Counted from the first letter of the stretch, positions 7,460-57,135 are shown. The stretch: DNA of 64,000 bases from Macrostomum lignano (GCA_002269645.1 NIVC01001811.1:434001-498000), one strand, 5' to 3'. The notes: generated from the sequence alone by a model not told the origin. Translations and numbers: made by a program.

Positions 7460-21211
<13,752 letters not shown>

Positions 21212-21239: not shown

Positions 21240-22535
<1,296 letters not shown>

Positions 22536-22896
22536 TAATTCATGGAAAGAGACGCACATATTATACAGAATTATTATTTCTCTGCTTATGCAGAGCTTTT
22601 ACAAAGTTATATTATTACAAAGCAAATAATTTATAGTTAATTATTATCTTTTTTCACTTCTTAAGTAGTAGCAGTTTATTCACGTTGTCATTTAAGCAAC
22701 ATTTTTAGCTATTCCCATCCTATCTGTGGCCATCATTTTCTGTTTTTCAATTAACATTGCAATAAAATTCCAGTAGCTATTTGTACGCTGATTAAGTATC
22801 GAAATTTATATACTCGTAGCTATATAAGTATAAAAACTCTAAGGCTTTGCTTAATACTCACTGTAGCTACACCTTTTCGCGTTCAATTTTGATCAA

Positions 22897-24175
22897 AGTC
22901 CAGTTATAAAAAAACTAGCGGAAATTCAATTCAGACAATTCAGACTGGGGCAACGCTTACGGAAAATCAATAGAAGCAAACCCCAGTTTAAAACACTATG
23001 CCACTGAAGCAAGGTTTAGCCATAGACAAAATCATCCCCAGTCTGAATTGTCTGAATTGAATTTCCGCTACACCATTTTACCCTCGAATTTGAACAAGGA
23101 GAACTTCGAAACCGACAAACTACTCTTCAATATTGACACTCTATGGTCGGGAACTCAAAATCTACAATCGATATTGACAGATCAAGCTTCAATTTTGACC
23201 AACTCTTAGGGCATAAATTTCGTATGCCGTGGTCCTCCTGATCCTCTTTATCCCCAACTGATTCGCCAGGTGCACAAAGTCGTCTCGGTTCTCATGAGCA
23301 GAAATCAGGCGCTGTCGGTCCTGGAAGGACACAGACCGATTTTTCGGCGGCCAGCTAGGCTGTTTCTGCTCCTCTTAAAAAACCTTCTGTGGCGATTAGC
23401 GATTAAAAGTCACAAACACGAGCAGAGCAAGAGCTGCTGTTTTCATGCTCTTTTGAATTCCTCCGTGACAAGATGTGCATTCGTTGGTCTGACCAACCAT
23501 CTATGATAAAAACTGAAGCAGTAGCCAATTAGATTCGAGGCGCAGGCTGCCTCAAGACATGGACAAAAAATAAACTGCCTTAGACAAATGACTGCCTCGA
23601 AATTTCCAAGCTTAACGATTCTTTGTCAAAATTGTCAAAATCTTAGTCAAAAAGTCTTAGTCAAAATTGATTGTAAACTGTTCAATATTGATTAGGAGTT
23701 GTCAAAAATGAAGCGGACTTTTTGGGTACACAAACCATAGAGTGTCAGTTTTGAAGCAACTCTGTCAAAATAGAATCGGACTTTGCGGCCCAACCAGTCA
23801 GGCTATTTTAGTCTGTGTATGTAAAAAGATGGAGAAAATTTTTTTATTAATACTTGTAGATCCCGAAAGAAAGGTCAGAATGAGCTGATTTTGCACAGAT
23901 AACTTCAGCCCCGTTCAGGTTTTCATTGGATTACTTTGTTACCGAATTCTCCAAAGACAAGTTGACTAAACGTGCATTGTCAAAATTTGATTAGTTGGTC
24001 AAAATTGAAGCTTGATCTGTCAATATTGATTGTAGATTTTGAGTGCCTGACCATAGAGTGTCAATATTGAGGAGGAGTTTGTCGGTTTCGAAGTTCTCCT
24101 TGTTCAAAATCGAGGTTAATACTCGTATTGACCAACTACACCAACTAAAATGGTGTAGTTTTTGAGAACTGGACT
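22897..24175. mobile_element. Three nested non-autonomous inverted-repeat elements
   Basis: Inner 1: 22918-23068 with 33-bp perfect TIRs (GCGGAAATTCAATTCAGACAATTCAGACTGGGG) between TA dinucleotides. Inner 2: 23081-24116 with about 120-bp TIRs (CCCTCGAATTTGAACAAGGAG...) between TA dinucleotides. Removing both restores an outer hairpin, AGTCCAGTT..AAAAACTACACCATTTTA / TAAAATGGTGTAGTTTTT..AACTGGACT. Confidence 0.8.
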
Positions 24176-25627: not shown

Positions 25628-26163
25628 GGCTGTTGTTATCTAACGAAAACAACAAAAACAGATCCATTTTTAGTCAGTCGACGAAATGTCAGTCAATCAA
25701 CAAATAGTTAAAGAAAGATGAACAGTTTTACGCCATCTTTCTCCATTACAACTGTTGGTTGTTTACTCTCATTCGAAGTTGGTTGTTCAATTCTGCCATT
25801 CTCCAATTCGATCCCAATCTTCTTGGTAACGAAGCAGGATGTAGAAACCCCAAATGGTAGACTCGATGTACTTGCGATTTACAATTGTTGATCAGTCTCT
25901 CGGTGCATGCCATCGGAGATTATGTTGCTAAGCGAACGAAACTCTGTCCAAGAGTAAGAGCCTTAGTGTAGCGCTGCACCGACACAGGCTTCTTATGTCC
26001 AGTGACGACCTTCTTTTATTTTCTTAACTGTGACAAAATTATTCTTGATGAAAATTTGTCTATAGTCAGAATGTAGATTGCTGGCTTCCACACCCCCCAG
26101 CAGGGACTCCGTCCCCGCACCCCCGCTTGATGAGAATTTGTCTGGTCTATGGTAAAAAGCCCA

Positions 26164-26560
26164 CTAACAATATACAATCGTGTTAGTATGGACATCCGGG
26201 TTGTTAGGGTCCACGAAGTGCAGCCGGTGGTTTACCGTCAAATTGTTGGGCAGTTGGTTGTACGCCTGCCACTGGTCTGTGATGATGCGCGTCCCGGGCA
26301 GCACGTACCACTGCGCAAGGCGCAGGATGTTGGCCGCCTGCGATCCGGTATGGCCACCAACATGCAGCGTTAGAACCCCGTTCAAACATTCCTAGAACCC
26401 ACTGGCCTGGCCAATACTGGCCTTGGTGGTACTTGCGGCGGAAGAAGTAGCTTTCATCGATTTCAGCGTCGACACCAGGCCCTCCAAGCTGCAGTGGATG
26501 GTCCTGCAGGTACTGGCCCCAGATGTCCCGGATGAAGTTTTGCCAATCCACGATGGTCTG
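26164..26560 (-). pseudogene. Merlin / IS1016(IS1595)-family DDE transposase fragment
   Basis: VDWQNFIRD...EIDESYFFRRKYHQG...WVLGMFERG, then via frameshifts RCMLVAIPDR and YVLPGTRIITDQWQAYNQL...TVNHRLHFVDP...HTNTI; truncated before the final catalytic Glu. Confidence 0.85.
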
Positions 26561-27956: not shown

Positions 27957-29514
27957 TTACTCAAAAAAGAATTCCACTACGTTGCTGGAACCGTTGGCTA
28001 CTATCCTCTTCTTCTTAGCCGGACCGGCAATTCGCAAATCGCAGGCGCCACTCGAAAATTGCTTGGCCGGTGCCTCAGTTGCGGTTGGATGTTTGTCGCT
28101 ACAGCCTCCCAGTGCTGGTGGCGCACGATCGGCGAGAGACTCGGTCAGCTGGCTGCTCAACTTGGCAAGAATGCTGTCTCTCTTTTTTCCCTGTCTGATG
28201 TACCGCTCCACTGAGGCGCTCGCCTGTTTCAAATATTTAAGAAGGATGCAAGAGAGAGTAGATAGAAAAAATCTCAAATATTTAAAGCATTTAATTATGC
28301 GGCTTATGATAGACAAGAAAATACAGAAAAAAGCACGTAGAAATTACCTTGTGTCCAGTCACCTTGGCGATAGTCTCTGTCGAATATCCAGCTTCGTGGA
28401 GCTCAGTGACTACAGTGGGTCGAACACAGTGCGCCGTATAGCTTCTCGACAGCCCGGCACTGGAAGATATCCGCTTAAGCATTGGTCCAAGCGTGTTGAT
28501 TCCGATTGCCTGTTTCGTATACCACAGGCCATTCGAGCCAACCAGCTGCTTCGGTCGCAGAAAAAAGTCCGAACCGTTCCATCCAGGCACTGCTTCGATC
28601 TTCCGCAAATACATGCGAAAGGCTTCAACGGGACACGATTTCTGATCGGACCCGGCCACCATGATCGCTTGCTTTGGGTCGTTGCTCTGCCTCAAATCCG
28701 TTGATCCATGGACAGTTTTACTGGTTCCAACTTGAAGCACAATGGCCACTCGTCCCTCAGCCAGACGCTTCTCAGAAAACGACTTTGCAGTCAGTCCTCT
28801 GAGCCAATCGCGGCCCCGGTTACCGAAATAATATAGAATACTGAAATACACTTTATCCTGAAGTTTGGTTGGACTGCTCCGATCGAAGTAGGTGTGCAGT
28901 TTAGACAGGTCGTCCGTTTCAATGGCCGAGAAATGATTGATTCTTCCTCCAAGACGCGGGAATTCGTTACAGGCATGTTTCAATGTCAGATTGACCGAAT
29001 GGAATTGCGGCAGAGAGATAATGTCCAAAGAGCGAAGCCTCATAAAGTGCCGATAAAGTCCGGCACGCATTCCCAACATTGTGTTGGGTGAATAGGATGA
29101 GCCGTCAGGCTTCTTTAGAGCGGCGTAAAAATAACGAAGAAATTTCGCAAGCTGCTCAGGAGTCACGGTCTCAAAGTCAAGGTGAATGTTGTTCTCCCGC
29201 AAAAAATCTTGAAACCGAAGACACGAAGCTTTCTCCTTGGCAACGCTTGACTCGCACTGATTTTCTCGTTCCAGCTTAGCGGCCAAGCTTTCAAGTTCAT
29301 CGATGTTGCACAAAGAATTCGGATCCACAGACATCTGCTCGTCCAAAAGTTTGCTTGTAACTCCTTCTTGCGAACAAGTGAGCTTGGTGATCTCGCGTTC
29401 GAATTTGCTGCTTACCGACTCGATAAACGTCTCCTCGGCGGACAATCCACAAACAGTCGCATACTGCATGTCGATTAGTGGAGCCGCCAAGTTTGAATTA
29501 ATTACACTCGCCAT
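27957..29514 (-). CDS. Crypton-type (DUF3504-like) tyrosine recombinase, two exons, about 477 aa, apparently intact
   Basis: Exon 1 29514-28348 (ATG GCG; 389 codons); GT-AG phase-0 intron 28347-28224 (124 bp); exon 2 28223-27957. Motifs: LAKFLRYFY...DGSSYSPNTM...RAGLYRH; catalytic R (FGNRGR), K (GTSKT), HCVR, TGHK and, across the splice, ASASVERY; also SCPVEAF, WYTKQAIGINTL, AGLSRSYT. An additional upstream exon cannot be excluded. Confidence 0.88.
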
Positions 29515-31139: not shown

Positions 31140-31400
31140 TTCTGATGGAACACTGCATTACTGCCCATTAAGCAGACCCCTAAGCAGGCCCACATAGAAG
31201 TGTACAGCGGCCCTTACTTTATTTATCGTTCGGCATGTACACTTAGACTGTGCCTTGGGGGTTGGCCTTCAAGAGCGATAATTGCAGCCAAGCCGAGATT
31301 CCAATTGAGCCCCAAAACTAATGTGGCGGCTGCACTTGGAATCGAGCCTGGAGCGCCGGTAAATAAGAGCGCCGCGCTTAGACCACTGGGCTACGGCACC
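31140..31400 (-). mobile_element. tRNA-derived SINE
   Basis: Minus-strand head GGTGCCGTAGCCCAGTGGTCTAAG... with A-box TAGCCCAGTGG and B-box-like GGCTCGATTCC (31328-31400). Stems do not pair as a true tRNA; 3' boundary approximate. Confidence 0.6.
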
Positions 31401-32633
31401 CATTCCCCAACCTTAACAACAGGTTATTATAAATGTGGCCAGGACCACACACACTTACACAAATAGCGAGCTGGCTCGCTTCCCATGCATTTGAATATTT
31501 GCCCTGAGTTCACAAACATGTACCGTATGTTATTATTTTTACTATTTTTAACCGTTGACTACTTAAGTAGCATTATTACCTGAATTGCATGTAGCTGCAT
31601 TTTTCGCCAATTAGATAAATATTAATCCTTAAGGAGCGGTCTACTTCGACTAATGGCTTTTTCTAAGAAACTAATTACTTCCGTGAAGGGGATTATGCAG
31701 AGATGCGCGAGTGATCAATTAATTACCTGCAGGTCACAGTCGGCTTAGAAGATTATCTACGCGACAAGGAAATAATAGAAATTAGATAATTTGCTAATCC
31801 CCGCTCGCGTCAATGCGTGCTCAAGCATATTTCGAGCTGCAACAGCGTGCCACGGAAGATATTGCAGGGCAAAATTTTTTTTGTAATTTTCAAGACAAGG
31901 ACTGAGGCCTGCTTGACCATGGCCTCGTGTCAAAACAACACGTGCAAATGCTTCAAAAACAAGGCTGATAAAAAAACTGTAAACTATAATCAATTATACT
32001 GTACACCCGATCCAAGTTTCGCTTCGCGGTACATTAGGAGAATATGAACTTTTTAATGTTTTATTTTAGCACTCAAATTTTCGATTTTAATCTTCTAAAC
32101 TTCCATGGCTTTATTGCACGTAACTTTGGGTTGTTCGGTTAGATATTGAGCTCGCAAGTTTGTTAAGAAAACGTTTAAAAAACATTTTACATAGAATACA
32201 GTCGTACTTTTTAATCGGCAAATATCTGATTTTTGCATAGCACTGAATGGGGTTTTGCCAGAGACAAATTCAGCGCACCCGGAACAAAGCATCATTCTTG
32301 CTTCATAGGAAATTGGAAGTCCTTGAAATGGACTGGAACGTCTATGGCTAGACCACAGTATCGTTTGCATTGAGCGGATTCCCTCGGATCAGAATGCAAT
32401 CGAGCCAATATACGAGAGTAAACTTTATTGATGTATGCTCTATGTTATTTTCCTCGTTTCAGGGGATAAATTTAAATTGGGTTTCAGATGCACGATATTT
32501 TAACAGTGCCAAATCTAATAAAAATACCCCGTGATACCTTCTTAACTTAATTTTCCTAGTACAACTAGTTTTTGGCGAAGTAAAATTTATTTTAGTACGA
32601 TACTACTATATTACTATCGTTAAATTGTGTGTA

Positions 32634-33984
32634 CTTCGGCTGTCCGGAAAGTCGCGAGAATGTATTTTAAAAACCAGTCAGAACTATCAAAAAACACGAT
32701 AACAGCACTAGTTGGTAATGTAATCTCCCCTTGCATTGATTACAGCTTGGCAATGGTCAACGAGTCGCTGAACCTCTCTTTTTAAACAATCTTCGTCAAG
32801 GCCTCTTGCCCACTGCAACGCAGCTTCTCGAACTTCATTGTGGTCGCTGAATACTCGCCTGGAGAAATCATTCTTCATCCAACTGAACAAAAAACGGTCG
32901 CACAGATTGAAGTCTGGGCTGTAGGGACTCTGAAACACCAGCTGAACTCCACGGGACTCCATGTACTGCTGCACAGAACGGGCTACGTGAGGTCGCGCAT
33001 TGTCCCACTGCCAAAGAACATCCGACAGGTGAATTGGCTTTGACCTCAGAGTACGCCATAGGTCTCCCGTGTGCCGAATGAATTCAACTATGCCATCTGC
33101 ATCAACAGTTTGCTTCGGGGCTGTGGATTTAATGGAGAAGCGCTTGCTTGGAGTGAAAGCAACCAGAAGCATTGTCTTTGCATTCCCGACCGAGTGCCTG
33201 ACAACCTGGGGCCGATATCTCCTTGGCCAAGCCAGCACCTGTTGTTTTGCTTTGTGCCAGTGTTGTTCAGGTACACCCACGTCTCATCTTCCACCACGTA
33301 CTTGTCGCAAAAGTTTTCCACCCCCTCGTTGTAAAAAAGCCTGCGGATTTGCTTGGCACAATTGATGCGAGCAGTCTTGTTCTCCTCGGATAGAGCATGA
33401 GGAACCCAGACGGCAGAAACGTTTCGAAGGTGCAAATCCTCGGTCAAAATTTCGTGCACTGTTGTTTTACCAACTTCCAAAAAGTCAGCGAGGTCTCGGA
33501 CACCAACTTTTGAATCCTCTTCAACGAGAGCTCGGCAGGTTTCGATCAGTTCCGTTGTCCTTGTTGACCGTGGCCGGCCAGTCCGAGGAGCTGAGGCCAG
33601 GGGAAATGCTTTATCACGGAACTTTGAGTACCATCTATAAACCGTTGACTGACCTGGTGCGGCATCTCCATAAACTTTAAGTAGTTCGTCATAACAACTA
33701 ATAGCAGAGATTCCAAGACGGTATCTAGCGTAGGCATAAGCCTGGAAATCTTCCATTTTGACGAACTCGCTATTAAAATTTTCAAGCTTGATCACCGCGT
33801 TGCATTGGTTATTGAGCACTTTATGCTGAGCTCGCCCCTGCCCCCAATTTTGCTGCTAGAACAACAAAAACTTTCACTATAGACATATATAAGTCTATTA
33901 TTGAAATTTTATGTGTGCCATGTCATCAGCTTGCTGCTTTCTTGCTTGACTGACACATTCTCACGACTTTCCGGACAGGCGAAG
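32634..33984 (-). mobile_element. Full-length mariner element (1351 bp), D,D34D transposase with one frameshift
   Basis: 30-bp TIRs (28/30 identical) CTTCG[G/C]CTGTCCGGAAAGTCG[C/T]GAGAATGT; TA at 32632-32633 and 33985-33986. ORFs 33088-33819 and 32708-33280 join near 33215. Motifs WVPHAL, EDETW, WDNARPH, then 34 residues to D in SPDFNLCDRFLF. Confidence 0.96.
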
Positions 33985-34166
33985 TATTATTACGGTAAAT
34001 TCAAAGAAAGTGAAATATCAATAAAGTCTATCAATAAATAATTTCGTCAGATTGTATTTATATTTGATTGACATCTTTGCATTGCCTGGAACTTTTTCCC
34101 TGGTTTCTCAAAACGCTCTTTAGGTACACAGCGACTGAGGTTTGCCAAATTTTCTTCTTCTTTTGG

Positions 34167-34415
34167 TCAACCAAATCGAGGATCGGGCAGCCATCGAGGC
34201 CGTTGCCCCAGCCTCCCGCTCCATCGCATCCGACCCTCCGGATTGGGGTCGGGCAGCGGCCACCTGTACGACAGTTGAGAGGAGCGCAGAAAGTTGCCGT
34301 AAAATCGTTTACGAAGTTGCTGCAGCTGGTCATCCGGCGGGTCATCGGCTGGAGCCGCCGCAGCCGTGGCAGTCAGGACGACCAGAACGACGCTCGCTAA
34401 AGTGAGCGGTGACAT
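34167..34415 (-). CDS. Putative secreted neuropeptide precursor ending PRF-G (RFamide-like), 82 aa
   Basis: Signal peptide MSPLTLASVVLVVLTATAAA, acidic spacer, RKR cleavage site, internal G-R sites, C-terminal ...RPRWLPDPRFG-stop. Splice acceptor TTGCAG directly before G-ATG; candidate GTGAGT donors at 34501 and 34468. Confidence 0.62.
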   Translation of the reverse strand: MSPLTLASVVLVVLTATAAAAPADDPPDDQLQQLRKRFYGNFLRSSQLSYRWPLPDPNPEGRMRWSGRLGQRPRWLPDPRFG

Positions 34416-35046
34416 CCTGCAAATCGCGAGACAAGGATGTTACGACACTTTTACACTGCAATACTCACTGGCACAGGGCTAAGCACTTTAAATTGACTCA
34501 CCTTAGTAAGTCAGTGTTTTGACAGGTTAAGTAACTCAATTTTTCTTTTTCGTTCAGCTCGAAGTCAATTCTAGAAATTTCTAGCGGTGGCAAGTTTTCT
34601 CTGCACTAGCCGATATTTATAAATATTCCACCAGCCAATGGCCGCATCATTGAAGCTTGGCGCTTCCTCATTCGCTGGATTTAAAAAAAAACCGGCTATA
34701 TTTTACATGCATTGCCGAGTTCATGCTTGTCATAACCTATTTTTCAAGTCGACTCACAATCTTGTCTCTTGTATTTGAAGAATCGCCAATGCAATTCTTT
34801 GATATTGCCGCCAAAAGTTATAATCAAAGATAAGCTACGAATATTATCGAATACGAATATCGATAAGCTACAGATTAAGTGAATTCTTTAGTTCTAGCAA
34901 AAGTTTAAATTATTTTTTAGCTATCGAAAGTTTCTTCACGGAGAACTATTATAATAAAGCAGAAAAAGGCCACACTGGATGATTCGTGAAGATTTCGTTG
35001 GAGGCCGCGGTTATCACTGCAAAACGCATTGGCGAGTTTTCATTTT

Positions 35047-36480
35047 TTAGCGATAGTTTCCCACTATCTCACCTTCCGGACTTCCGAATTCCAAATGAAG
35101 CAAGTTTGAGGTGCACTCACAAGCTAAACTAGCTATTCTTTTGTAAACTGCTATCGCAGACCTGCAAGCAAGCAAAATTCGAGCGAACTTTCTAGAATGT
35201 TTTTTTCGATCGACTTTGTCTGTGGCAAAACCGCATTTAGCGCTGTGCAAAAATCTGTGCAATTTCTGTAATTGGAAACCACAACTGTCTTTCAAGCGTT
35301 GTGTCCTGGTGGTAATGGTGACCAAGTCTGCCGCATTTGCTGCATCGATTCTTTCGATGGGGAGAGTTTCTTGTCCAATGATTTCTGAAAGTATCCAGAC
35401 TAATTGCTTAGAGTCTTGCTTTGACTTCTGTAAGACTGCTGACAAGGTTGCTTCGCAGACTTGACGTTCTGGATTGCGCCAGTTGACGAAATTGTCTAAC
35501 AATTTTAGGGTGACTCACTTGCTAGGGTGCGTGCGTCCGGCAGGGTCAAGTTGTCTTCCTGGAGCAGTCATGGATGGATCAGACGATTTATGAAGCCAAC
35601 AACAGATCGGTCTCTTGCTGCCTCATCTAAAAATCTGTCGAAGTGACACGTGATAGCCAGCTTCCGTAGACTTGTGAGGAATTCACCGACGGATTCCAGC
35701 TTCCGTAGACTTGTGAGGAATTCACCGACGGATTCCAGCTTCCGTAGACTTGTGAGGAATTCACCGACGGATTCCAGCTTCCGTAGACTTGTGAGGAATT
35801 CACCGACGGATTCCAGCTTCCGTAGACTTGTGAGGAATTCACCGACGGATTCCAGCTTCTGTAGTCCTGCTGTGGAAGTTAAAACAATTGTTAAAATGGT
35901 CCCTAATGGTCCCTAAGTTCCTTGATCAGATTACTTAGGGATCATCATCCTTCAGCAGACAGCAGACTCTTCATCGCTTCATCTGCCCCTTAGTTCACGA
36001 CGAGGTACTGCTTGAGTCTTTCTGAAACTTCCCAGCGTTCCGGCTTGGTGACGTTGAACTCTGCTACTTTGCTTGACGTTATTGTTATGTCTTCTGCTCT
36101 GACCTTCTGGAGCTTCTACATTCAAGTAAGGAAGACTGTGCTTTGTATCTTTAGCATTACAGGCTAAGTCTTTATTGCTCCGCTTGCGCGTGTCCTCTTA
36201 ATATCCATGTCGCAGATACTTTATTAGAAAATAATAAGTTGCACCATAGACAACAAAATTATCCGCTTCACGTCTTTTGAGTCTTTGCCAGAACAGCGCA
36301 GATCATTATCCAATGAAGACTCTTTAGGCTTCCTTGAAGCCAGCAGAATGCTGATAAGTTTAAATGTGTCCTTTCTGCAGACATCGAGGAACACCGCACA
36401 CTTGCTCAATGCGGTCAATGTTTTGCAGCGATTCCTCACTCTCTCTCAAAGCAGCCTTCTCAAAATACATTGAAACTACA
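35047..36480 (-). pseudogene. Possible degenerate multi-exon gene of unknown function
   Basis: Protein-like segments (ORF 35047-35502, a stop-interrupted frame at about 35950-36120, ORF 36224-36439) with some splice-like boundaries; could not be joined into a clean model. Confidence 0.3.
35656..35857. repeat. 39-bp minisatellite x5 (CCAGCTTCCGTAGACTTGTGAGGAATTCACCGACGGATT)
   Basis: Five near-identical tandem units. Confidence 0.96.
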
Positions 36481-38310: not shown

Positions 38311-39453
38311 AGGTTCCGCTTGATGCGTTTATTTTCTGTCCGTTTGTCCTTGCAGCAGCAATCAGCATTTTACTAATTATAATTGCCTGCCGCTGCAGCA
38401 ACAGCACCTGAACACGTGTGAACAACAGCTACTCGTCCCGTGTTTAATTATTGTGACGCATCTGCTAATGAAAAGACGATTAAATCAGCATTGGCCAATT
38501 AAAAATCCATAAAAATCTTTCGTCTTTAAGAAACCCCTGGCTAATCTTGAAAATAATTTTATCGGAAAAATCATGAGCCAATTTTGTTGCACGTCTGCTT
38601 TCTTTGCTAAAGCGTTCAGCAGCTGAGCTCAAGAAAGCAATTTCGAGAATTTGCTCGAAAATTTTTGCAACGCTTTTTGAGAGGCTTTGTAAAAACTTTT
38701 TTGAAGCGTTCTAAAATATTCTGCATGGAAAATTCTAGAATATTATAATCTTTCGTCGGTAACTCTAGAATTTTCATTGAGACAGAAGAGAGGACACAAA
38801 GGGGGAGACAGAACAGAGTAGGCAAAAAAGAAAATAGGTCTACGAGAACTGGTAAGTGAGAAATTGTCTTAAGTTTCTTAATTTCTGTACGGGTTTTGAG
38901 GGAATACTTAATTCCAATGCAAACCTTCTTGACCTAGAATTTTCCTCTGATCAGTCGCATATCAGTTGCTTAGGCAGGTGAAAAGCCATCTTTCCAAGCC
39001 TGTTGTTCACTTTACTAGCTTTTCATCCGATTAACGGAACTTTTGTTTGTTTGAAGGATAGATAGAGATAGAGACTTGTTTAATGCTACTTGAAGTAGCC
39101 ACCCAAGCATTTACACTGTCCCCTTGATATCAGCGAACGTTTTTGCACGTGTATAAGACGAATCGAAAAAATAAACTTGAGTAGGTAATTAACGGATTGA
39201 CTCGCAGAAATCTCGTAGAATATTAAGCGTCTGTTTTTGCAAGGCTAAACTCTTCTTTGATCGTTATTAGAAAGTTGAATAATACTCGTATCATATTTAG
39301 TTAAAGTTGCTCTACTTGGAAAATTACAAACAGTTTTTCATTAGACTAATGACTCTGCCTTTGAAGAAGCTTTGCAAGTTCCGTTTCTCGACAGCCTAAA
39401 AATTTGCTTGCCCATGCCACATTCATAAGAAGTCCTTCCCGGCGACCCCTTTG

Positions 39454-41518
39454 CTAGGCGAGATCGCGGGTCAGAAGCTGACGTCTCCGATGCCGCAACA
39501 ATTTTCTGCCGCCTCTACGACCGTCGAGAGCCGACAGTGAGGCCACTGAGGCAGCCGAGCGACAGCTGCTCGGCTCAGACGACGACGAAGTCTCCGCTGA
39601 CGATGACGTCACGAATCCGTCCAGCTCTGCAGCGCCAGAACCGCCGCCGCCACTGCTCAAGACGCTCGAACTGGACTGGTGACGACTGAGTGGCGAGGAA
39701 GGCACCTGAAGCTGCTGCTGACGTTGCTGGTTGAAACTGTTCAAGCTTCCTGGGCTCCTGTGGGTGAAGAAAGATTGATACCATTCTAATTCAAACCATT
39801 CAAAAGCATCCCAAGACCTTCGATATGGTTAAGTTTCAGATTATTTACTCTCTTCAAAAATTCACAGTCATATTCGCTGTTTTACTTCAAGCAAACCCCT
39901 TAAAAAACCCAACTTCAAGTAGCGGCGTTAGGTCACTTCAGGCAGGTGACCTACCTAGCAGATGACGTCAGCTGCCTCTGGGTTGGCAACGGTCGCTGCT
40001 GTTGCTGCTGCTGATGCTGCCGACGAAAAAAGCTGAACCGACCGACCAGTCGACGAGGCGACGCGACTGGCGACGGAGTGGGCGACTGCGAAGCGGCGAT
40101 CGCAGGACGATTGGATGCCGACCGAGGCCGGTGAACGTTGAACGAAGCTTCGCGTTTCGGCCACCGTCCAGCCCCGGTAGATTCGACGGCCGTGGCTTTC
40201 TTCACCAGGCAGGGCTCGCTTGGCCAGCGCCTGCGCCCGAAGCTGAGCCCCATGAGTCGCTGGAAGAGCTGCAACAGCTGACTGGATCGAGCGCACTGCA
40301 TCGCCAAGTAGCCGCCTTCAACGTCGTAGCAGGCGTCCTGATCGAGGCTACCAACGAACTGGACGAAGAACCAACCGTTCAGACTGGAGCAGCTGGCCAC
40401 CCAACTCATTTTGCAGGTGATAATGCACGCCTTGAGAATTAGCATTGCGTTGTAATGCGTGTTAGACTAGACATCTATTCTGTCCTAAGTGGCTTTACTA
40501 GATCGATGCAGTAGGAATGTTAGTGTCCTGCACACGACAGGGTCTAATTGATTTTTTTCGACAGGCTAGCAAACACGAACTACTTAAACGCGCCCATGAA
40601 CTTTTGCTTCAAGCAAAAAAATCTTTATGAGTCTTTTCCAGGCCTAGATTTGATTGATTTAGAAAAAACGAGCGGGACACCTGATCCAACAAGCTCAAAT
40701 ACGCTTTCAATACCGAAGTCAAAATTTGATCTGCTAGTACTCGTATATTGAAGTCTAGACACGGCTGTGAAGTCAATTGGATTTTCTTCTCGTATCGATT
40801 ATTGAAATCCACGAGCTTCTAATGAACTCCTGTGTGCGCCTTTGCATCTTGTGTGTGCAGCCCTTACCTGATTAACGTCCTGCAGTTCGAATGCCTCTTG
40901 AGTGACGCGCAGCACGTACAAATAGTCAGAGCAGAGACCCAATGATTGCACCGTTAGGTTGTTCAACAGTCGAACAATCCATCCATTGTCAATGAAGTCA
41001 TTTTCAGTGCTGCTTTTGCTCTCCTGACACTGCAGATCAATGAACGTGCACAAAGGCTGTCTCAAAGCTGTCAGACAACTGTAGATCTTGTCAATTTCTA
41101 GTTGATTCTCCTGGTAGAGATTGACAACCGAACCGCCGAGTAGCGAATTCGTCTGGCGTCGCAGAGTCAAGCAGTGCACCAGTACCGAGTTGTTCTCGCC
41201 CCGCATTCTTGAGGCCAGAGCGGTCTCGCGTAGCGAACCCAACGGAATTGAGCGTCGCAGCGTTGGCCTGTCAAATAATGACGAATTAGCCGAGATTAAG
41301 TCTGCCGCGATTGACAAAGTGGCCGATAGTTTGTTGCGACAAGTTTTCACTGCAACCCGGACTCGACAGTAGTTCGCGTCCAGCGGCCAACTGATCAAGC
41401 AGTCGTTGGCTCGACGGAAATAGCTCTTGTTGATGTACACTGTGGCGCTGTTCATGCTCCAGTTGGTCGTCAGCTTCGCAAGGTAGCCCTCTCTTTGAAC
41501 TATTGCGGTCAGTATTGA
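39454..41518 (-). CDS. PH + PTB domain adaptor protein (IRS/DOK/FRS2-like), at least 3 exons, 5' end unresolved
   Basis: Phase-consistent exons 41518-40868, 40430-39955, 39757-39454. PH-like start IVQREGYLAKL...; IRS-type PTB pattern WIVRL...LGL..DYLYVLRVT..AFEL|...WVASC..LNGWFFVQF.G......EGGYLAMQC.....LL.LFQ..M; Ser/Gln-rich tail. Confidence 0.68.
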
Positions 41519-42599
41519 CTATAATACAGTAAAGGTTGCTGTCAGCTTTGAGACTGTTGCAACGGTTAATCTCCTCTTAATACGGAGCGTTTAACGAGAC
41601 CAAAACAGTTTTATAACGCCGTTAGGAAGTCGCTTATTTACTACCAGTTCTCTTGCATACTAATTATAAATTTGACGATAGGCAGCAGTTTAGCAGGCTG
41701 AAGCGTACGCGCAGACAGGAAAGGCTCTGAACACAATATGTGAATAGGGAGTCGCTGTGTACGCTGCAGAAGTTTATGTGCTTATATTCCAGGCTATCAA
41801 TGTGCATGTGGACTGCCAGAGCCAATGGCAGTATGGCATGCAACAGACCCACTCATCATAAATGCCTAAAAAGCATAGGAACCAATTGCCCATTGCCCAT
41901 TGCCCATTGGCCCAAGCCCTGCTCCTCATTGTATTTGCTATTCTGGGTATTTTTGCTTCTAAAAGTCTAAAACTATGCAAACGCGCGCAGATGTGTCAAC
42001 TAAAACTTCCAATCAACACGCAATCCTAACTTGTAGGTGCTTTGAAGCTTGAACCAATCAATCCAGTTTGCTCAAATCAGTTTTAAAATAATTCTGAATC
42101 CCTGGTTGAAGCAAAGACCACTAGACCAGGAAGGACATTGCGAGGAACTGGTTAACATAAATTTATGCTTCCTCGTCTTGGGCTTCGGGCTTCGAGAAAT
42201 GTTACTCGTTCATCATTATCCCCGTGTCAGCAAATCCTGAGACATCCGGCATCTCCCTCTGGGTGTTGAGAAGTCCCGGGGACCGTATCAATTCCTCATT
42301 CAGCAGCTCGCAGCGCTTGCCGGGACTGCGACACGTTCGAGACGCGAGCAGCGATGGGAACGGACCGATACAGACAGCCGGGCCTGTCATGCCACTCGGG
42401 CTGCTGAAAGCTTGATGAATTTTTTAAGAACCCCCGCCAACTCAAGCAGCCCGGCCATGCATCATGGGGCAGACAGGGAGAGAGGGAGGAGAAGGGAAAG
42501 AGTCAACAACGAATTATGCGTGATCCGTTTCTCGATGCTGGATCTGCGTAGTCCTCTCCTACCATCTTCGTTGTGTATTTCTGACAAAAGTGCAGCGAA

Positions 42600-43250
<651 letters not shown>

Positions 43251-48070: not shown

Positions 48071-48743
48071 TTTAATCCATGAAATCTTTTAAGAATAAAA
48101 AATGCAAAATATCAACGAAAGTGTCGACACTGAAATGAATATTTTTGCGAAAAAAAAACAATTTTTCCTTGCGCTAGAAATTCCCCAAAACCGCTGAGCA
48201 TAAAGTTGATCAGCCATCCTTGATTGCGCAGTTTAAGAGTTAGAACTGACAAAATAACCAGCCATGTTTCCTTTCAAAACAAGAAAAAGAATCAGGGAAT
48301 TGTGAATTTCTGCAACTGCACCGGAACAACTGCATGTGGCCTGCCTGCCGGTTTGAAGACTTTAATAAAAATTGACGATTCACTCAGAGGTACAGAGCCA
48401 CAATTCCCTGCGGATTTTTAGCAACCAAGCAAAAAGTTAAGAACAAAAAAATCAATTCTCATCAGTTCGTAAATTTGCCAACTTTTTTGCTGCTTCTCTG
48501 TGTCGAAATGCCGACACAATCCGCTCCGCAGATTGGTGCCTGTGCCGGAAAACTTCACTGTGCGGCTCTTCAGTGGGGAAATAAAAAAGCAAAAGCATTT
48601 GCTAACAGGCACTAAAATGAATTGCAAATTTTCATGCCCATGTAGCAAACAAGGTTTTATGAGGCCTAAAATCAAGGATGTTAGTTGGTGAGACGTATGA
48701 AATATGAATTTCAACTTTTCATTACAAAAAGAGGCACTAAGAC

Positions 48744-49316
<573 letters not shown>

Positions 49317-50388: not shown

Positions 50389-53300
50389 CAATCAAACAGA
50401 CACAGAAATCTGTTCCAGTTGTGTCTGTAGGTTATGTGGACCACCTGAGAGCCAGAGCCTCAAACAGACAGAGAAATCTGTTCGAGTTGTGTCTGTAGGT
50501 GAGGTGAACCACCTTCTGAGAGCCAAAGCTCAAACAGACTGAGAGAGCTGCTTCAGTTGTGTCTATAGGTTATGTGGACCACCTAAGAGCCAGAGCCTCA
50601 AACAGACAGAGAAATCTGTTCGAGTTGTGTCTGTAGGTTAGGTGGACCACCTTCTGAGAGCCAAAGCCTCAAACAGACTGAGAGAGCTGCTTCAGTTGTG
50701 TCTGTAGGTTATGTGGACCACCTAAGAGCCAGAGCCTCAAACAGACAGAGAAATCTGTTCGAGTTGTGTCTGTAGGTTAGGTGGACCAGCTACTCCAAAG
50801 CACTTCTAGGCGATAATCTGAGCCAGGAGTCTCCGAGAGCCTCTCGTTACACATCCAGATGTTCTGCCTTGATGCTGGACTAGCTCACTTTCTAGGAATC
50901 TGTTCTGATTGCATTCTAACAAACTGAAGCATTCTCGCACTAAACTTTCTCGGCGGCTCTGAGAGCCAGAGCCTCAAACAGACAGAGAAATCTGTTCGAG
51001 TTGTGTCTGTAGGTTAGGTGGACCAGCTACTCCAAAGCACTTCTAGGCGATAATCTGAGCCAGGAATCTCCGAGAGCCTCTCGTTACACATCCAGATGTT
51101 CTACCTTGATGCTGGACTAGCTCACTTTCTAGGAATCTGTTCTGATTGCATTCTAACAAACTGAAGCATTCTCGGCACTAAACTTTCTCGGCGGCTCTGA
51201 GAGCCAGAGCCTCAAACAGACAGAGAAATCTGTTCGAGTTGTGTCTGTAGGTTAGGTGGACCAGCTACTCCACAGCACTTCTAGGCGATAATCTGAGCCA
51301 GGAATCTCCGAGAGCCTCTCGTTACACATACAGATGTTCTACCTTGATGCTGGACTAGCTCACTTTCTAGGAATCTGTTCTGATTGCATTCTAAAAAACT
51401 GAAGCATTCTCGGCACTAAACTTTCTCGGCGGCTCTGGGATCCACAGCCTCAAACAGACAGAAATCTGTTCGAGTTGTGTCTGTAGGTTAGGTGGACCAG
51501 ATACTCCAAAGCACTTCTAGGCGATAATCTGAGCCAGGAGTCTCCGAGAGACTTTCGTTACACATCCAGATGTTCTACCTTGATGCTGGACTAGCTCACT
51601 TTCTAGGAATCTGTTCTGATTGCATTCTAACAAACTGAAGCATTTTCTGCACTAAACTTTCTCGGCGGCTCTAAGAGCCAGAGCCTAAACAGACAGAGAA
51701 ATCTGTTCGAGTTGTGTCTGTAGGTTAGGTGGACCACCTTCTGAGAGCCAAAGCCTCAAACAGACTGAGAGAGCTGCTTCAGTTGTGTCTGTAGGTTATG
51801 TGGACCACCTAAGAGCCAGAGCCTCAAACAGACAGAGAAATCTGTTCGAGTTGTGTCTGTAGGTTAGGTGGACCAGCTACTCCACAGCACTTCTAGGCGA
51901 TAATCTGAGCCAGGAATCTCCGAGAGCCTCTCGTTACACATCCAGATGTTCTGCCTTGATGCTGGACTAGCTCACTTTCTAGGAATCTGTTCTGATTGCA
52001 TTCTAACAAACTGAAGCATTCTCGGCACTAAACTTTCTCGGCGGCTCTGAGATCCAGAGCCTCAAACAGACAGAGAAATCTGTTCGAGTTGTGTCTGTAG
52101 GTTAGATGGACCAGCTACTCCACAGCACTTCTAGGCGATAATCCGAGCCAGGAATCTCCGAGAGCCTCTCGTTACACATCCAGATGTTCTGCCTTGATGC
52201 TGGACTAGCTCACTTTCTAGGAATCTGTTCTGATTGCATTCTAACAAACTGAAGAATTTTCTGCACTAAACTTTCTCGGCGGCTCTGAGAGCCAGAGCCT
52301 CAAACAGACAGAGAAATCTGTTCGAGTTGTGTCTGTAGGTTAGGTGGACCAGATACTCCAAAGAACTTCTAGGCGATAATCTGAGCCAGGAGTCTCCGAG
52401 AGACTTTCGTTACACATCCAGATGTTCTGCCTTGATGCTGGACTAGCTCACTTTCTAGGAATCTGTTCTGATTGCATTCTAACAAACTGAAGCATTTTCT
52501 GCACTAAACTTTCTCGGCGGCTCTAAGAGCCAGAGCCTAAACAGACAGAGAAATCTGTTCGAGTTGTGTCTGTAGGTTAGGTGGACCACCTTCTGAGAGC
52601 CAAAGCCTCAAACAGACTGAGAGAGCTGCTTCAGTTGTGTCTGTAGGTTATGTGGACCACCTAAGAGCCAGAGCCTCAAACAGACAGAGAAATCTGTTCG
52701 AGTTGTGTCTGTAGGTTAGGTGGACCAGCTACTCCAAAGCACTTCTAGGCGATAATCTGAGCCAGGAGTCTCCGAGAGACTTTCGTTACACATCCAGATG
52801 TTCTGCCTTGATGCTGGACTAGCTCACTTTCTAGGAATCTGTTCTGATTGCATTCTAACAAACTGAAGCATTCTCGGCACTAAACTTTCTCGGCGGCTCT
52901 GAGAGCCAGAGCCCCAAACAGACAGAGAAATCTGTTCGAGTTGTGTCTGTAGGTTAGGTGGACCAGCTATTCTACAGCACTTCTAGGCGATAATCTGAGC
53001 CAGGAGTCTCCGAGAGCCTCTCGTTACACATCCAGATGTTCTGCCTTGATGCTGGACTAGCTCACTTTCTAGGAATCTGTTCTGATTGCATTCTAACAAA
53101 CTGAAGCATTCTCGGCACTAAACTTTCTCGGCGGCTCTGAGAGCCAGAGCCTCAAACAGACAGAGAAATCTGTTCGAGTTGTGTCTGTAGGTTAGGTGGA
53201 CCAGCTACTCCAAAGCACTTCTAGGCGATAATCTGAGCCAGGAGTCTCCGAGAGCCTCTCGTTACACATCCAGATGTTCTGCCTTGATGCTGGACTAGCT

Positions 53301-56300: not shown

Positions 56301-57135
56301 CTGTTCGAGTTGTGTCTGTAGGTTAGGTGGACCAGCTATTCTACAGCACTTCTAGGCGATAATCTGAGCCAGGAGTCTCCGAGAGCCTCTCGTTACACAT
56401 CCAGATGTTCTGCCTTGATGCTGGACTAGCTCACTTTCTAGGAATCTGTTCTGATTGCATTCTAACAAACTGAAGCATTCTCGGCACTAAACTTTCTCGG
56501 CGGCTCTGAGAGCCAGAGCCTCAAACAGACAGAGAAATCTGTTCGAGTTGTGTCTGTAGGTTAGGTGGACCAGCTACTCCAAAGCACTTCTAGGCGATAA
56601 TCTGAGCCAGGAGTCTCCGAGAGCCTCTCGTTACACATCCAGATGTTCTGCCTTGATGCTGGACTAGCTCACTTTCTAGGAATCTGTTCTGATTGCATTC
56701 TAACAAACTGAAGCATTCTCGGCACTAAACTTTCTCGGCGGCTCTGAGAGCCAGAGCCTCAAACAGACAGAGAAATCTGTTCGAGTTGTGTCTGTAGGTT
56801 AGGTGGACCAGCTACTCCAAAGCACTTCTAGGCGATAATCTGAGCCAGGAGTCTCCGAGAGACTTTCGTTACACATCCAGATGTTCTGCCTTGATGCTGG
56901 ACTAGCTCACTTTCTAGGAATCTGTTCTGATTGCATTCTAACAAACTGAAGCATTTTCTGCACTAAACTTTCTCGGCGGCTCTGAGATCCAGAGCCTCAA
57001 ACAGACAGAGAAATCTGTTCGAGTTGTGTCTGTAGGTTAGGTGGACCACCTTCTGAGAGCCAAAGCCTCAAACAGACTGAGAGAGCTGATTCAGTTGTGT
57101 CTGTAGGTTAGGTGGACCAGCTTCTCTACAGCAAT
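50389..57135. repeat. 238-bp satellite array with interspersed about 65-70-bp submonomers and a 2.4-kb higher-order duplication
   Basis: Monomer spacing 53141, 53379, 53617 (238 bp). The diagnostic variant CTAAGAGCCAGAGCCTAAAC at 51671/52523 recurs at 54089/54940 (offset 2417-2418). Confidence 0.97.

What the first reader, a model, noticed from the sequence alone, without database searches (positions are those of the whole stretch)
34167..34501. Candidate novel RFamide neuropeptide precursor beside a mariner insertion
Seen: 82-aa ORF with a signal peptide, RKR site, potential amidation signals (PNPE-G-R, MRWS-G-R) and a terminal PRF-G-stop; LPDP occurs twice; acceptor immediately before the ATG and GTGAGT donors giving an 85- or 52-bp 5'UTR intron. 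Established: a C-terminal Gly is the amidation donor, and RPRF/PRF-amide ends typify NPF/NPY-type and other RFamide peptides. Inference: a small neuropeptide gene easily missed by annotation. A full-length mariner sits about 180 bp past its stop codon.
Basis: partly seen in the sequence, partly recalled or inferred. Interest (0 to 1): 0.72.

Follow-up and report, generated by a model that had tools for sequence, protein, structure and literature searches.

The report
Orphan PRF-amide peptide precursor candidate
A small, unannotated 82-codon gene candidate in what looks like a Macrostomum flatworm genome has the layout of a secreted, amidated peptide-hormone precursor and probably is one. It has no known relatives and no expression evidence yet, and it is not an NPF/NPY-type peptide.

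Summary
An 82-aa ATG ORF sits at 34167-34415 (-) with a signal-peptide-like N-terminus, an acidic spacer, an RKR site, Gly-Arg sites and a PRF-Gly-stop end. GTGAGT donors and a TTGCAG acceptor lie one base before the ATG, and a mariner lies 181 bp past the stop.

- The ORF lies on a sharp 62% GC island (flanks 32% and 41%). Most other such islands outside tandem repeats in this window are exons or transposase ORFs.
- Its codon usage ranks 2nd of 38 free ORFs under a model trained on independent M. lignano exons.
- The 232 nt upstream contain no ATG.
- TATAAATA occurs three times in 64 kb, all at this locus. One copy is about 200 nt upstream of the ATG on the correct strand.
- RW(P)LPDP occurs twice, and every nucleotide difference between the copies is synonymous.

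The window is probably from a Macrostomum flatworm.

Evidence against: no homologue or paralogue was found anywhere I could search, there is no expression data, and no canonical poly(A) signal lies before the mariner. The C-terminus is DPRF, not RxRF, so it is not NPF/NPY-type. The mariner transposase is frameshifted.

Verdict: probably a real, orphan, prohormone-like gene (about 0.55). Neuronal function is unproven.

The parts
34614..34621 (-). TATAAATA, candidate TATA box, 199-206 nt upstream of the ATG
   Evidence: Only 3 matches in the 64-kb window on both strands, all at this locus; 1.4 expected for the whole window. A promoter role is inferred.
34502..34590 (-). Putative non-coding first exon. 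The 5' end is inferred as about 30 nt past the TATA box; the 3' end is at the AAG|GTGAGT donor.
   Evidence: No ATG anywhere from 34647 down to the start codon, a 232-nt gap that only 4-5% of ATG-to-ATG gaps on this strand reach. Donor read. The start site is inferred, not shown.
34417..34501 (-). Putative 85-nt 5'UTR intron (GTGAGT...TTGCAG). An alternative GTGAGT donor at 34468 gives 52 nt. The same acceptor could instead take the spliced leader.
   Evidence: Sequence. Motifs match the M. lignano cis donor GT[G/A]AG and trans-splice acceptor [T/C]TNCAG (PMC8629364).
34167..34415 (-). 82-codon ORF plus stop: the candidate prepropeptide
   Evidence: GC is 62% against 32% and 41% in the flanks. 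Best of six frames. Codon usage ranks 2nd of 38 with an independent training set.
34356..34415 (-). Signal-peptide-like segment, aa 1-20 (MSP / LTLASVVLVVL / TATAAA). Predicted cleavage is AAA|AP.
   Evidence: Rule-based check only: uncharged hydrophobic core, small residues at -3 and -1, no Pro at +1. About 3% of random ORFs in GC-island-like DNA and about 6% in window-like DNA pass the same heuristic. SignalP was not available.
34305..34355 (-). Acidic spacer APADDPPDDQLQQL followed by the tribasic site R35-K36-R37 (34305-34313)
   Evidence: Read from the translation. Convertase cleavage is inferred from general prohormone knowledge.
34230..34262 (-). Paracopy 1: W52-PLPDPNPE-G-R62, preceded by R51
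34170..34193 (-). Paracopy 2: W75-LPDPRF-G82 then stop, preceded by R74. Predicted product WLPDPRF-NH2, [M+H]+ 929.50.
   Evidence: A repeat like RW(P)LPDP arose in 272 of 200,000 residue shuffles. The copies differ by 4 substitutions, all synonymous, and one whole-codon indel.
34053..34064 (-). AATATAAATACA, the only poly(A)-signal-like variants between the stop and the mariner, 102-108 nt past the stop
   Evidence: There is no AATAAA or ATTAAA in this 181-nt stretch.
32632..33986 (-). Mariner element: 1351 bp (32634-33984) plus TA target-site duplications. It has 32-nt terminal inverted repeats and a transposase split by one frameshift.
   Evidence: repeats 94% complementary; TA on both sides; ORFs 33088-33819 and 32708-33280 overlap in different frames; HTH_48, HTH_32, DDE_3.
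32586..32591 (-). First canonical AATAAA on this strand outside the mariner. It would lie about 220 nt past the stop if the mariner were absent.
   Evidence: Its use as the original poly(A) signal is inferred.

Best explanation
A real but unannotated small gene on the minus strand encodes an 82-aa secreted prepropeptide with the layout of an animal prohormone. The genome is probably a Macrostomum flatworm.

Proposed mechanism, all steps inferred from general prohormone biology:
1. Transcription starts about 30 nt past the TATAAATA at 34621-34614.
2. A short non-coding exon is cis-spliced (85-nt or 52-nt intron) to the acceptor one base before the ATG.
3. The first 20 residues direct the product into the ER and are removed.
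4. A PC2-type convertase cuts after R35-K36-R37 and releases the acidic spacer.
5. The C-terminal Gly82 is converted to an amide. This yields a 44-residue, +5 charged, Pro/Arg/Trp-rich peptide ending in PRF-NH2.
6. If the single Arg sites are also used, the products are WLPDPRF-NH2 and WPLPDPNPE-NH2, from two paracopies each of the form R|W..G|R.

What is shown is the sequence anatomy and its statistical support. The processing, the amidation and the producing cell type are inferred. The peptide is an orphan: it ends in RF-amide by chemistry but belongs to no described family.
For:
- GC island: GC is 62% on the ORF and drops to 32% and 41% in the flanks. Of the 12 stretches of at least 58% GC that do not overlap a tandem repeat, most fall on A2M exons or transposase ORFs.
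- Codon usage: with a model trained on M. lignano exons from another contig, the ORF ranks 2nd of 38 unmasked ATG-ORFs. Its scores (syn -0.08, full -0.04 per codon) lie inside the range of true A2M exon chunks (-0.14 to +0.18) and above the off-frame mean of -0.33 +/- 0.15. Two other top ORFs (13393-13641 and 16162-16488, +) lie inside the A2M-family gene span on its strand and are probably its exons. It is also the best of the six frames.
- ATG-free leader: 232 nt, reached by about 4% of gaps.
- TATA: TATAAATA occurs 3 times in the window, all here, one on the right strand about 200 nt upstream of the ATG.
- Splice signals: donor GTGAGT and acceptor TTGCAG fit the published M. lignano splice motifs (PMC8629364).
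- Internal repeat: RW(P)LPDP arose in 0.14% of shuffles. The copies differ by four synonymous changes and one codon indel.
- Precedent: planarian prohormones are similarly short, for example Smed-npy-1 at 67 aa and the similarly short Smed-npp-8, which ends in Gly-Arg (PMC2953531 supplement).
- Machinery: a PC2 homologue exists in M. lignano and its knock-down is lethal (PMC4490696).
Against: - No homologue: the word-index search gave 0 hits. phmmer against 1.84 billion representatives gave only three repeat or low-complexity hits. The best-looking one rests on an 18/21-nt match repeated in a tandem array.
- No exact gene is on record, there is no relative in JGI metagenome contigs, and no paralogue in the window.
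- No Pfam family matches any of the six frames.
- No expression data could be consulted.
- GC3 (0.63) equals the ORF's overall GC and is below the neighbouring A2M exons (0.68-0.91). A codon model trained on those exons did not separate the ORF from off-frame controls.
- Four of six frames are open, so ORF length carries no weight.
- No AATAAA or ATTAAA lies between the stop and the mariner.
- The signal peptide was judged with a crude rule, not a trained predictor.
- Several supporting tests were chosen after looking at the sequence.
Confidence: 0.55

Rival explanations
1. It is not a gene. A GC-rich, non-coding stretch (for example a decayed exon or repeat relic) happens to be open in several frames. 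One frame happens to start with a hydrophobic run and end in RFG.
For: - Four of six frames are open across the island.
- There is no GC3 excess (0.63 against 0.62 overall), and one codon test was neutral.
- No homologue, paralogue or annotated gene was found.
- No canonical poly(A) signal lies before the mariner.
- A genome of hundreds of Mb is expected to hold roughly ten chance ORFs with this feature set, at about 1e-3 per 64 kb.
- The window is 27.6% tandem repeats, so local duplications are common.
Against: Chance must also supply all of the following:
- the TATAAATA at promoter distance;
- the 232-nt ATG-free leader;
- splice motifs at the right places;
- host-like codon usage, rank 2 of 38;
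- a peptide-level repeat whose DNA differences are all synonymous.
The island boundaries coincide with the start and stop codons.
Confidence: 0.3
2. It is a real secreted peptide gene, but the product is not a neuropeptide. It would be a cationic Pro/Arg/Trp-rich peptide from a gland or epithelium, such as an antimicrobial-type peptide or a fast-evolving reproductive or adhesive secretion. The acidic propiece, RKR cleavage and C-terminal amidation would serve maturation, as in many animal host-defence peptides.
For: - The post-RKR peptide has 8 Arg, 7 Pro and 3 Trp in 44 residues, net charge +5, and is preceded by an anionic spacer. From my own knowledge, that layout is typical of pro-antimicrobial peptides.
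- The absence of any homologue fits a fast-evolving secreted product.
Against: - The two R|W...G|R paracopies and the RF-Gly end are more typical of multi-copy neuropeptide precursors.
- There are no PRP-type repeats or Cys framework of a described antimicrobial family, and no Pfam match.
- No expression site is known either way.
Confidence: 0.12
3. The ORF is the last coding exon of a larger minus-strand gene whose upstream exons lie in the GC-rich stretch at 39.4-40.5 kb. The hydrophobic run would then be an internal membrane segment rather than a signal peptide.
For: - The acceptor lies one base before the ATG, and the frame could continue from an upstream exon.
- Minus-strand ORFs with the best codon scores in the window lie 5.5 kb upstream, at 39954-40445.
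Against: - ORF 39951-40445 ends in its own stop.
- The TATA box, the ATG-free leader and an ATG in good context (A at -3) directly after the acceptor fit a separate transcription unit.
- An acidic stretch, rather than basic residues, follows the hydrophobic run.
Confidence: 0.03

Closest known systems
Flatworm NPF / NPY-like prohormones (e.g. Smed-npy-1 to npy-11)
   Same: Both are small precursors: 82 aa here and 67 aa for Smed-npy-1. Both have an N-terminal signal peptide and a C-terminal Pro-Arg-Phe-Gly amidation signal (PMC2953531 supplement).
   Different: - The known members end in G-R-P-R-F-amide, while this one ends in P-D-P-R-F, with Asp where the family has Arg.
- In the family the peptide follows the signal peptide directly and is followed by KR plus a short tail. 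Here an acidic spacer and RKR precede it and the stop follows the Gly.
- From memory, flatworm NPFs carry Tyr at -10 and -17. Those positions here are Arg and Trp.
- The preceding segment is Pro/Gly-rich, not helical.
- phmmer found no similarity.
FMRFamide-like peptides of flatworms (YIRFamide, GNFFRFamide; Smed spp-11, npp-4)
   Same: The peptide ends in RF-amide. Short peptides are flanked by basic residues, and there is more than one related copy per precursor (PMC2953531).
   Different: Known flatworm members have an aromatic or aliphatic residue before RF (YIRF, FFRF). Here it is D-P-R-F. Only one of the two paracopies ends in RF, and the other ends in NPE-Gly. No sequence similarity was detected.
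IPRFamide precursor of the polyclad flatworm Prostheceraeus crozieri
   Same: It is a flatworm neuropeptide named for a PRF-amide end and expressed in a few apical neurons (PMC10396302; PMC13551398).
   Different: Only the name could be compared, because its sequence is not in the text or the held supplement. The residue before PRF is Ile there and Asp here. Relatedness is untested.
Vertebrate LPXRFamide (GnIH/RFRP) peptides
   Same: Leu-Pro lies shortly before a C-terminal RF-amide.
   Different: The motif is L-P-x-R-F in that family and L-P-D-P-R-F here, one residue longer. The phylum and the precursor layout differ. I treat this as a coincidental resemblance, based on my own knowledge and the abstract of PMC6200920.
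Prohormone-4 / IDLSRF-like peptide precursor
   Same: The sequence right after the cleavage site, RFYGNF, resembles IDLSRFYGHFNT.
   Different: [quoted passage not shown] This ORF has no Cys and is 82 aa. Rejected.

Membership tests
NPF/NPY family | C-terminal R-x-R-F/Y-amide (flatworms: G-R-P-R-F-Gly) | tested here: not met
   The C-terminus is L-P-D-P-R-F-G-stop, with Asp at the position of the first Arg. Compare Smed-npy-1 ...VGRPRFGKR.
NPF/NPY family | A peptide of about 36-40 residues directly after the signal peptide, followed by Gly plus basic residues and a C-terminal flanking peptide | tested here: not met
   An acidic spacer and RKR separate the signal peptide from the 44-residue peptide, and the stop codon follows the Gly.
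NPF/NPY family | Tyr at -10 and -17 from the C-terminus with a helical segment before it (flatworm NPF signature, from my own knowledge) | tested here: not met
   Positions -10 and -17 are Arg and Trp. The last 30 residues hold 7 Pro and 4 Gly.
NPF/NPY family | Detectable sequence similarity to family members | tested here: not met
   phmmer against 1.84 billion representatives returned no neuropeptide precursor. Pfam found nothing.
RFamide-type neuropeptides (chemical class, not a homology family) | Precursor encodes ...Arg-Phe-Gly followed by a basic site or stop | tested here: met
   PRF-G-TGA at 34178-34167.
RFamide-type neuropeptides (chemical class, not a homology family) | The peptide is actually made, amidated and released by neurons | not testable with these tools
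   This needs RNA-seq, in situ hybridisation and mass spectrometry.
Secretory prohormone (general) | N-terminal signal peptide | tested here: inconclusive
   It passes a rule-based test (n/h/c regions, A at -3 and -1) that about 3% of random GC-rich ORFs and about 6% of window-like random ORFs also pass. No trained predictor was available.
Secretory prohormone (general) | Basic cleavage sites flanking repeated or related peptide copies | tested here: met
   RKR at aa 35-37. There are two R|W(P)LPDP...G|R/stop units, with repeat p about 0.001 in shuffles.
Prohormone-4 (IDLSRF-like) | LDL-receptor class A domain with six conserved Cys after the N-terminal peptide | tested here: not met
   The ORF contains no Cys. 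Family description from PMC8398477.
mariner (Tc1/mariner superfamily), for the neighbouring element | Element of about 1.3 kb with terminal inverted repeats, TA target duplication, and HTH plus DDE/D transposase | tested here: met
   The element is 1351 bp with 32-nt repeats 94% complementary, TA on both sides, and HTH_48 and DDE_3 hits. The reading frame is broken once.

The most novel reading that the evidence does not exclude
A lineage-restricted (Macrostomum-only, possibly recently arisen) amidated-peptide gene with two paracopies (WPLPDPNPE-NH2 and WLPDPRF-NH2) founds a new flatworm neuropeptide family with its own receptor. In this genome a mariner has landed in its 3'UTR, between the stop codon and the original AATAAA, giving a natural regulatory variant of a neuropeptide gene.
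Probability: 0.2. Interest if true: 0.5.

Novelty: new member of a known kind. Interest (0 to 1): 0.35.

Why it matters
Flatworm peptide hormones control germline development, regeneration and muscle. Their precursors are short, diverge quickly and are often dropped by annotation pipelines that discard ORFs below 100 codons. Macrostomum is a transgenic, RNAi-amenable model, so a confirmed orphan PRF-amide precursor would add a testable ligand to its peptide repertoire. It would also show that sequence-only scanning can recover such genes. If the candidate turns out to be untranscribed, it shows how convincing a chance prohormone look-alike can be in GC-rich patches.

Tried and rejected
1. Homology searches led nowhere:
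   - The word-index protein search gave 0 hits.
   - Exhaustive phmmer gave 3 hits, all tandem-repeat or low-complexity proteins.
   - I fetched the contig of the one with WPLPDPN x7. The DNA match is 18/21 nt repeated in an array, which is chance.
   - The exact-product look-up and the JGI metagenome scan found nothing.
   - The protein collection seems to hold Macrostomum only as NCBI/UniRef annotated proteins and not as run assemblies (sources). These negatives therefore say little about Macrostomum transcripts.
2. Prohormone-4/IDLSRF resemblance (RFYGxF) was rejected, because that family has an LDLa domain with six Cys.
3. The 'DPRFa' literature hit in Haemonchus is internal to nlp-7 peptides and irrelevant.
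4. I first guessed an arthropod, from the thioester-less A2M gene with a weak LDLa match. I withdrew this after the Crypton-like ORF and the shared repeats pointed to Macrostomum.
5. One protein search on the A2M exon was run with too strict a cut-off (1e-10) and returned nothing.
6. The first codon models, trained on the three neighbouring A2M exons, were self-referential. The synonymous-codon version was neutral. I replaced them with an independent M. lignano training set.
7. Rfam and tRNA scans of the window were empty.
8. McVeigh et al. 2009 (flatworm npp families, including M. lignano ESTs) is not held in the library. The IPRFamide sequence is not in the held supplement.

Full report
**1. 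The observation**

The minus strand carries an ATG-to-TGA ORF of 82 codons at 34415-34167. Its translation is MSPLTLASVVLVVLTATAAAAPADDPPDDQLQQLRKRFYGNFLRSSQLSYRWPLPDPNPEGRMRWSGRLGQRPRWLPDPRFG.

- RKR at aa 35-37, two Gly-Arg sites, a PRF-Gly-stop end, and LPDP twice.
- A TTGCAG acceptor ending one base before the ATG.
- Two GTGAGT donors, at 34501 and 34468, giving introns of 85 and 52 nt.
- A mariner whose edge is 181 nt beyond the stop.

An in-frame TAA lies 27 nt upstream of the ATG. The ATG has A at -3, both in the genomic sequence and after either splice.

They cannot be stand-alone eukaryotic genes.

**2. What organism this is**

- The window is 27.6% tandem repeats: 36 TRF rows, including kb-long (GACA)n, (AGAT)n and (AGAC)n arrays and a 6.3-kb array of a 238-bp unit.
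- An intact 407-aa Crypton-like tyrosine-recombinase ORF (28291-29514, -) has its best relatives in Macrostomum lignano at 61, 57 and 56% identity. The next hit is at 50% (a JGI metagenome contig) and the rest are at 34-38%.
- A 21.6-kb M. lignano locus fetched through one of those proteins shares several non-coding interspersed repeats with the window at 76-95% nucleotide identity. Its GC is 48.7%, against about 45% for the window.

I conclude that the window comes from Macrostomum, either M. lignano or a congener. My earlier guess of an arthropod, based on a thioester-less A2M-family gene, is withdrawn.

**3. Is it more than chance?**

ORF length is not evidence, because four of six frames are open across this GC-rich patch. 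The feature combination, however, is rare.

- In 300 Markov-simulated 64-kb windows, ORFs with a signal-like start, a dibasic site and a C-terminal amidation signal appeared 0.13 times per window. None ended in R[FYW]-Gly.
- In 6 Mb of random DNA with the composition of the window's GC islands, 0 of 17,130 ORFs had the full set. The product of the separate frequencies is about 1e-5 per ORF.
- That amounts to roughly one chance case per thousand windows. A genome of several hundred Mb would hold about ten, so more evidence was needed.

**4. Independent evidence for a gene**

(a) GC island. GC is 62% over the ORF and falls to 32% past the stop and 41% before the ATG. Of the 12 stretches of at least 58% GC that do not overlap a tandem repeat, most fall on A2M exons or transposase ORFs.

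(b) Codon usage.
- A model trained on the neighbouring A2M exons put the ORF frame first of six. Its synonymous-codon version did not separate the ORF from off-frame controls.
- I then trained on 1,483 codons of M. lignano exons from the unrelated contig. The ORF scored -0.08 (synonymous) and -0.04 (full) bits per codon.
- True A2M chunks scored -0.14 to +0.18, and the off-frame mean was -0.33 +/- 0.15.
- The ORF ranks 2nd of 38 unmasked ATG-ORFs of at least 60 aa. Among the other top scorers, 13393-13641 and 16162-16488 (+) lie inside the A2M-family gene span on its strand, so they are probably its exons, and 39954-40445 (-) also looks coding.

(c) ATG-free leader. The 232 nt upstream contain no ATG in any frame. 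Only about 4% of ATG-to-ATG gaps on this strand are that long.

(d) TATA box. TATAAATA occurs three times in the whole window on both strands, all at this locus:
- 34614-34621 on the minus strand, 199-206 nt upstream of the ATG;
- its palindromic partner on the plus strand (34618-34625);
- 34055-34062 on the minus strand, about 105 nt past the stop.

(e) Splice signals. The donors and the acceptor match the published M. lignano motifs GT[G/A]AG and [T/C]TNCAG (PMC8629364).

(f) Internal repeat.
- The peptide holds two units of the form R|W(P)LPDP...G|R-or-stop: AGG TGG CCG CTG CCC GAC CCC ... GGT CGG, and CGA TGG CTG CCC GAT CCT ... GGT TGA.
- They differ by four nucleotide substitutions, all synonymous in this frame, and by one whole-codon indel.
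- A repeat of this kind arose in 272 of 200,000 residue shuffles.
- A third, minimal R-W-S-G-R unit lies between them.

These tests were partly chosen after looking at the sequence, so I do not multiply their p-values. Together they make pure chance the less likely reading.

**5. Evidence against**

- No homologue was found by the word-index search or by phmmer against 1.84 billion representatives.
- The three phmmer hits are repeat proteins. The WPLPDPN x7 hit rests on an 18/21-nt match in a tandem array.
- No identical gene product is on record, there is no relative in JGI metagenome contigs, and no paralogue in the window. No Pfam family matches any frame of 33986-35520.
- These negatives are weak. 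All Macrostomum hits came from NCBI/UniRef annotation, none from run assemblies, and a self-hit was also absent for the 533-aa A2M exon. The source genome and its transcriptomes therefore appear not to be in the collections.
- GC3 (0.63) is no higher than the ORF's overall GC.
- No AATAAA or ATTAAA lies between the stop and the mariner. Only AATATAAATACA is present, at 102-108 nt past the stop.

**6. The mariner**

- The element spans 32634-33984 (1351 bp) with TA duplications on both sides and 32-nt terminal inverted repeats that are 94% complementary.
- Its transposase is in two overlapping frames. ORF 33088-33819 carries HTH_48/HTH_32 and ORF 32708-33280 carries DDE_3. There is a single frameshift, so the element is full length but not intact.
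- The first canonical AATAAA on the minus strand outside the element is at 32591, about 40 nt beyond the insertion.
- With the element removed, that signal would lie about 220 nt past the stop. The mariner may therefore sit inside the gene's original 3'UTR. This is inference.

**7. Mechanism**

The best reading is a secretory prepropeptide.

- The signal peptide is aa 1-20, with a core of LTLASVVLVVL and Ala at -3 and -1.
- An acidic spacer, APADDPPDDQLQQL, follows.
- Cleavage comes after RKR, basic residues are trimmed, and amidation uses Gly82.
- The minimal product is a 44-residue amide with 8 Arg, 7 Pro and 3 Trp, net charge +5, and [M+H]+ 5387.76.
- Use of the single-Arg sites would give WLPDPRF-NH2 (929.50) and WPLPDPNPE-NH2 (1063.52).
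- Neither internal Gly-Arg site has a basic residue at P4, P6 or P8. By the usual rules (my own knowledge) their use is uncertain.
- M. lignano has a PC2 homologue that is nervous-system expressed and lethal on knock-down (PMC4490696).

On trans-splicing: 11-30% of Macrostomum genes are trans-spliced (PMC10468722, PMC8629364), and the acceptor fits the trans-splice motif. The 35-nt spliced leader ends in ATG, however. Joined at 34416, that ATG would be one base out of frame and would open a 25-codon overlapping ORF. The cis-spliced model starting from the TATA box fits the ORF better. RNA-seq would decide between them.

**8. Comparison with known families**

- It is an RF-amide only in the chemical sense.
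- It fails the NPF/NPY tests. The end is D-P-R-F, not R-x-R-F. A spacer separates the peptide from the signal peptide. Tyr is absent at -10 and -17, there is no helical segment, and no sequence similarity. Compare Smed-npy-1 ...EYFAIVGRPRFGKR.
- It differs from flatworm FMRFamide-like peptides such as YIRF-amide and FFRF-amide.
- The RFYGNF resemblance to prohormone-4 was rejected.
- A non-neuronal role fits the composition equally well and cannot be excluded without expression data. Examples are a cationic Pro/Arg/Trp-rich host-defence-type peptide or a gland secretion.

**9. Verdict**

| Reading | Probability |
|---|---|
| Real small secreted amidated-peptide precursor | about 0.55 |
| ...of which a neuron-made peptide specifically | about 0.4 overall |
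| Chance ORF | about 0.3 |
| Secreted but non-neuronal | about 0.12 |
| Terminal exon of a larger gene | about 0.03 |

If real, it is a new, orphan member of a known kind of gene. It is useful to flatworm neurobiology but not surprising.

Noticed in passing
window 8909-18530 (+), with 17196-17210 and 15160-15651: A multi-exon alpha-2-macroglobulin/TEP-family gene. It has MG2, bait-region and TED domains, and human A2M and CD109 are its best solved relatives. The thioester motif GCGEQ is replaced by GSAES. One intervening ORF has a weak LDL-receptor class A match (E 0.0099, below the Pfam cut-off). This looks like a thioester-less, Mcr-like member in a flatworm.
   Followed up: partly
window 28291-29514 (-): An intact 407-aa Crypton-like ORF (DUF3504 plus tyrosine recombinase). 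It is 61% identical to M. lignano proteins and was the key clue to the source organism.
   Followed up: yes
window 22867-23070 and 31155-31405; L002 12440-13684: Non-coding interspersed repeats shared with M. lignano contig NIVC01001476.1 at 76-95% nucleotide identity.
   Followed up: partly
window 797-1632 (+): A second Tc1/mariner-type transposase remnant (Transposase_1, HTH_Tnp_Tc3_2) in two overlapping frames, so it is also frameshifted.
   Followed up: no
window 50392-57125; 21242-22535; 42599-43250; 48740-49316; 60983-62027: An extreme tandem-repeat load, 27.6% of the window. It includes a 6.3-kb array of a 238-bp unit with an internal 68-bp sub-repeat, kb-scale (GACA)n, (AGAT)n and (AGAC)n arrays, and about 50 copies of a 21-bp unit.
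   Followed up: no
window 39373-40461 (-): Two GC-rich stretches with Ser/Gln-rich minus-strand ORFs. ORF 39954-40445 has the best codon-usage score in the window. They are probably exons of an unannotated gene 5.5 kb upstream of the candidate. No Pfam match.
   Followed up: partly
window 26149-26546 (+) and 42207-42522: Further GC-rich islands outside repeats. ORF 26149-26370 (+) has an exon-like codon score. Their content is unidentified.
   Followed up: no
window 34055-34062 and 34614-34625: All three TATAAATA matches in the 64-kb window lie within 570 bp of each other and bracket the candidate ORF. The upstream one sits in a palindrome, ATATTTATAAATAT.
   Followed up: partly
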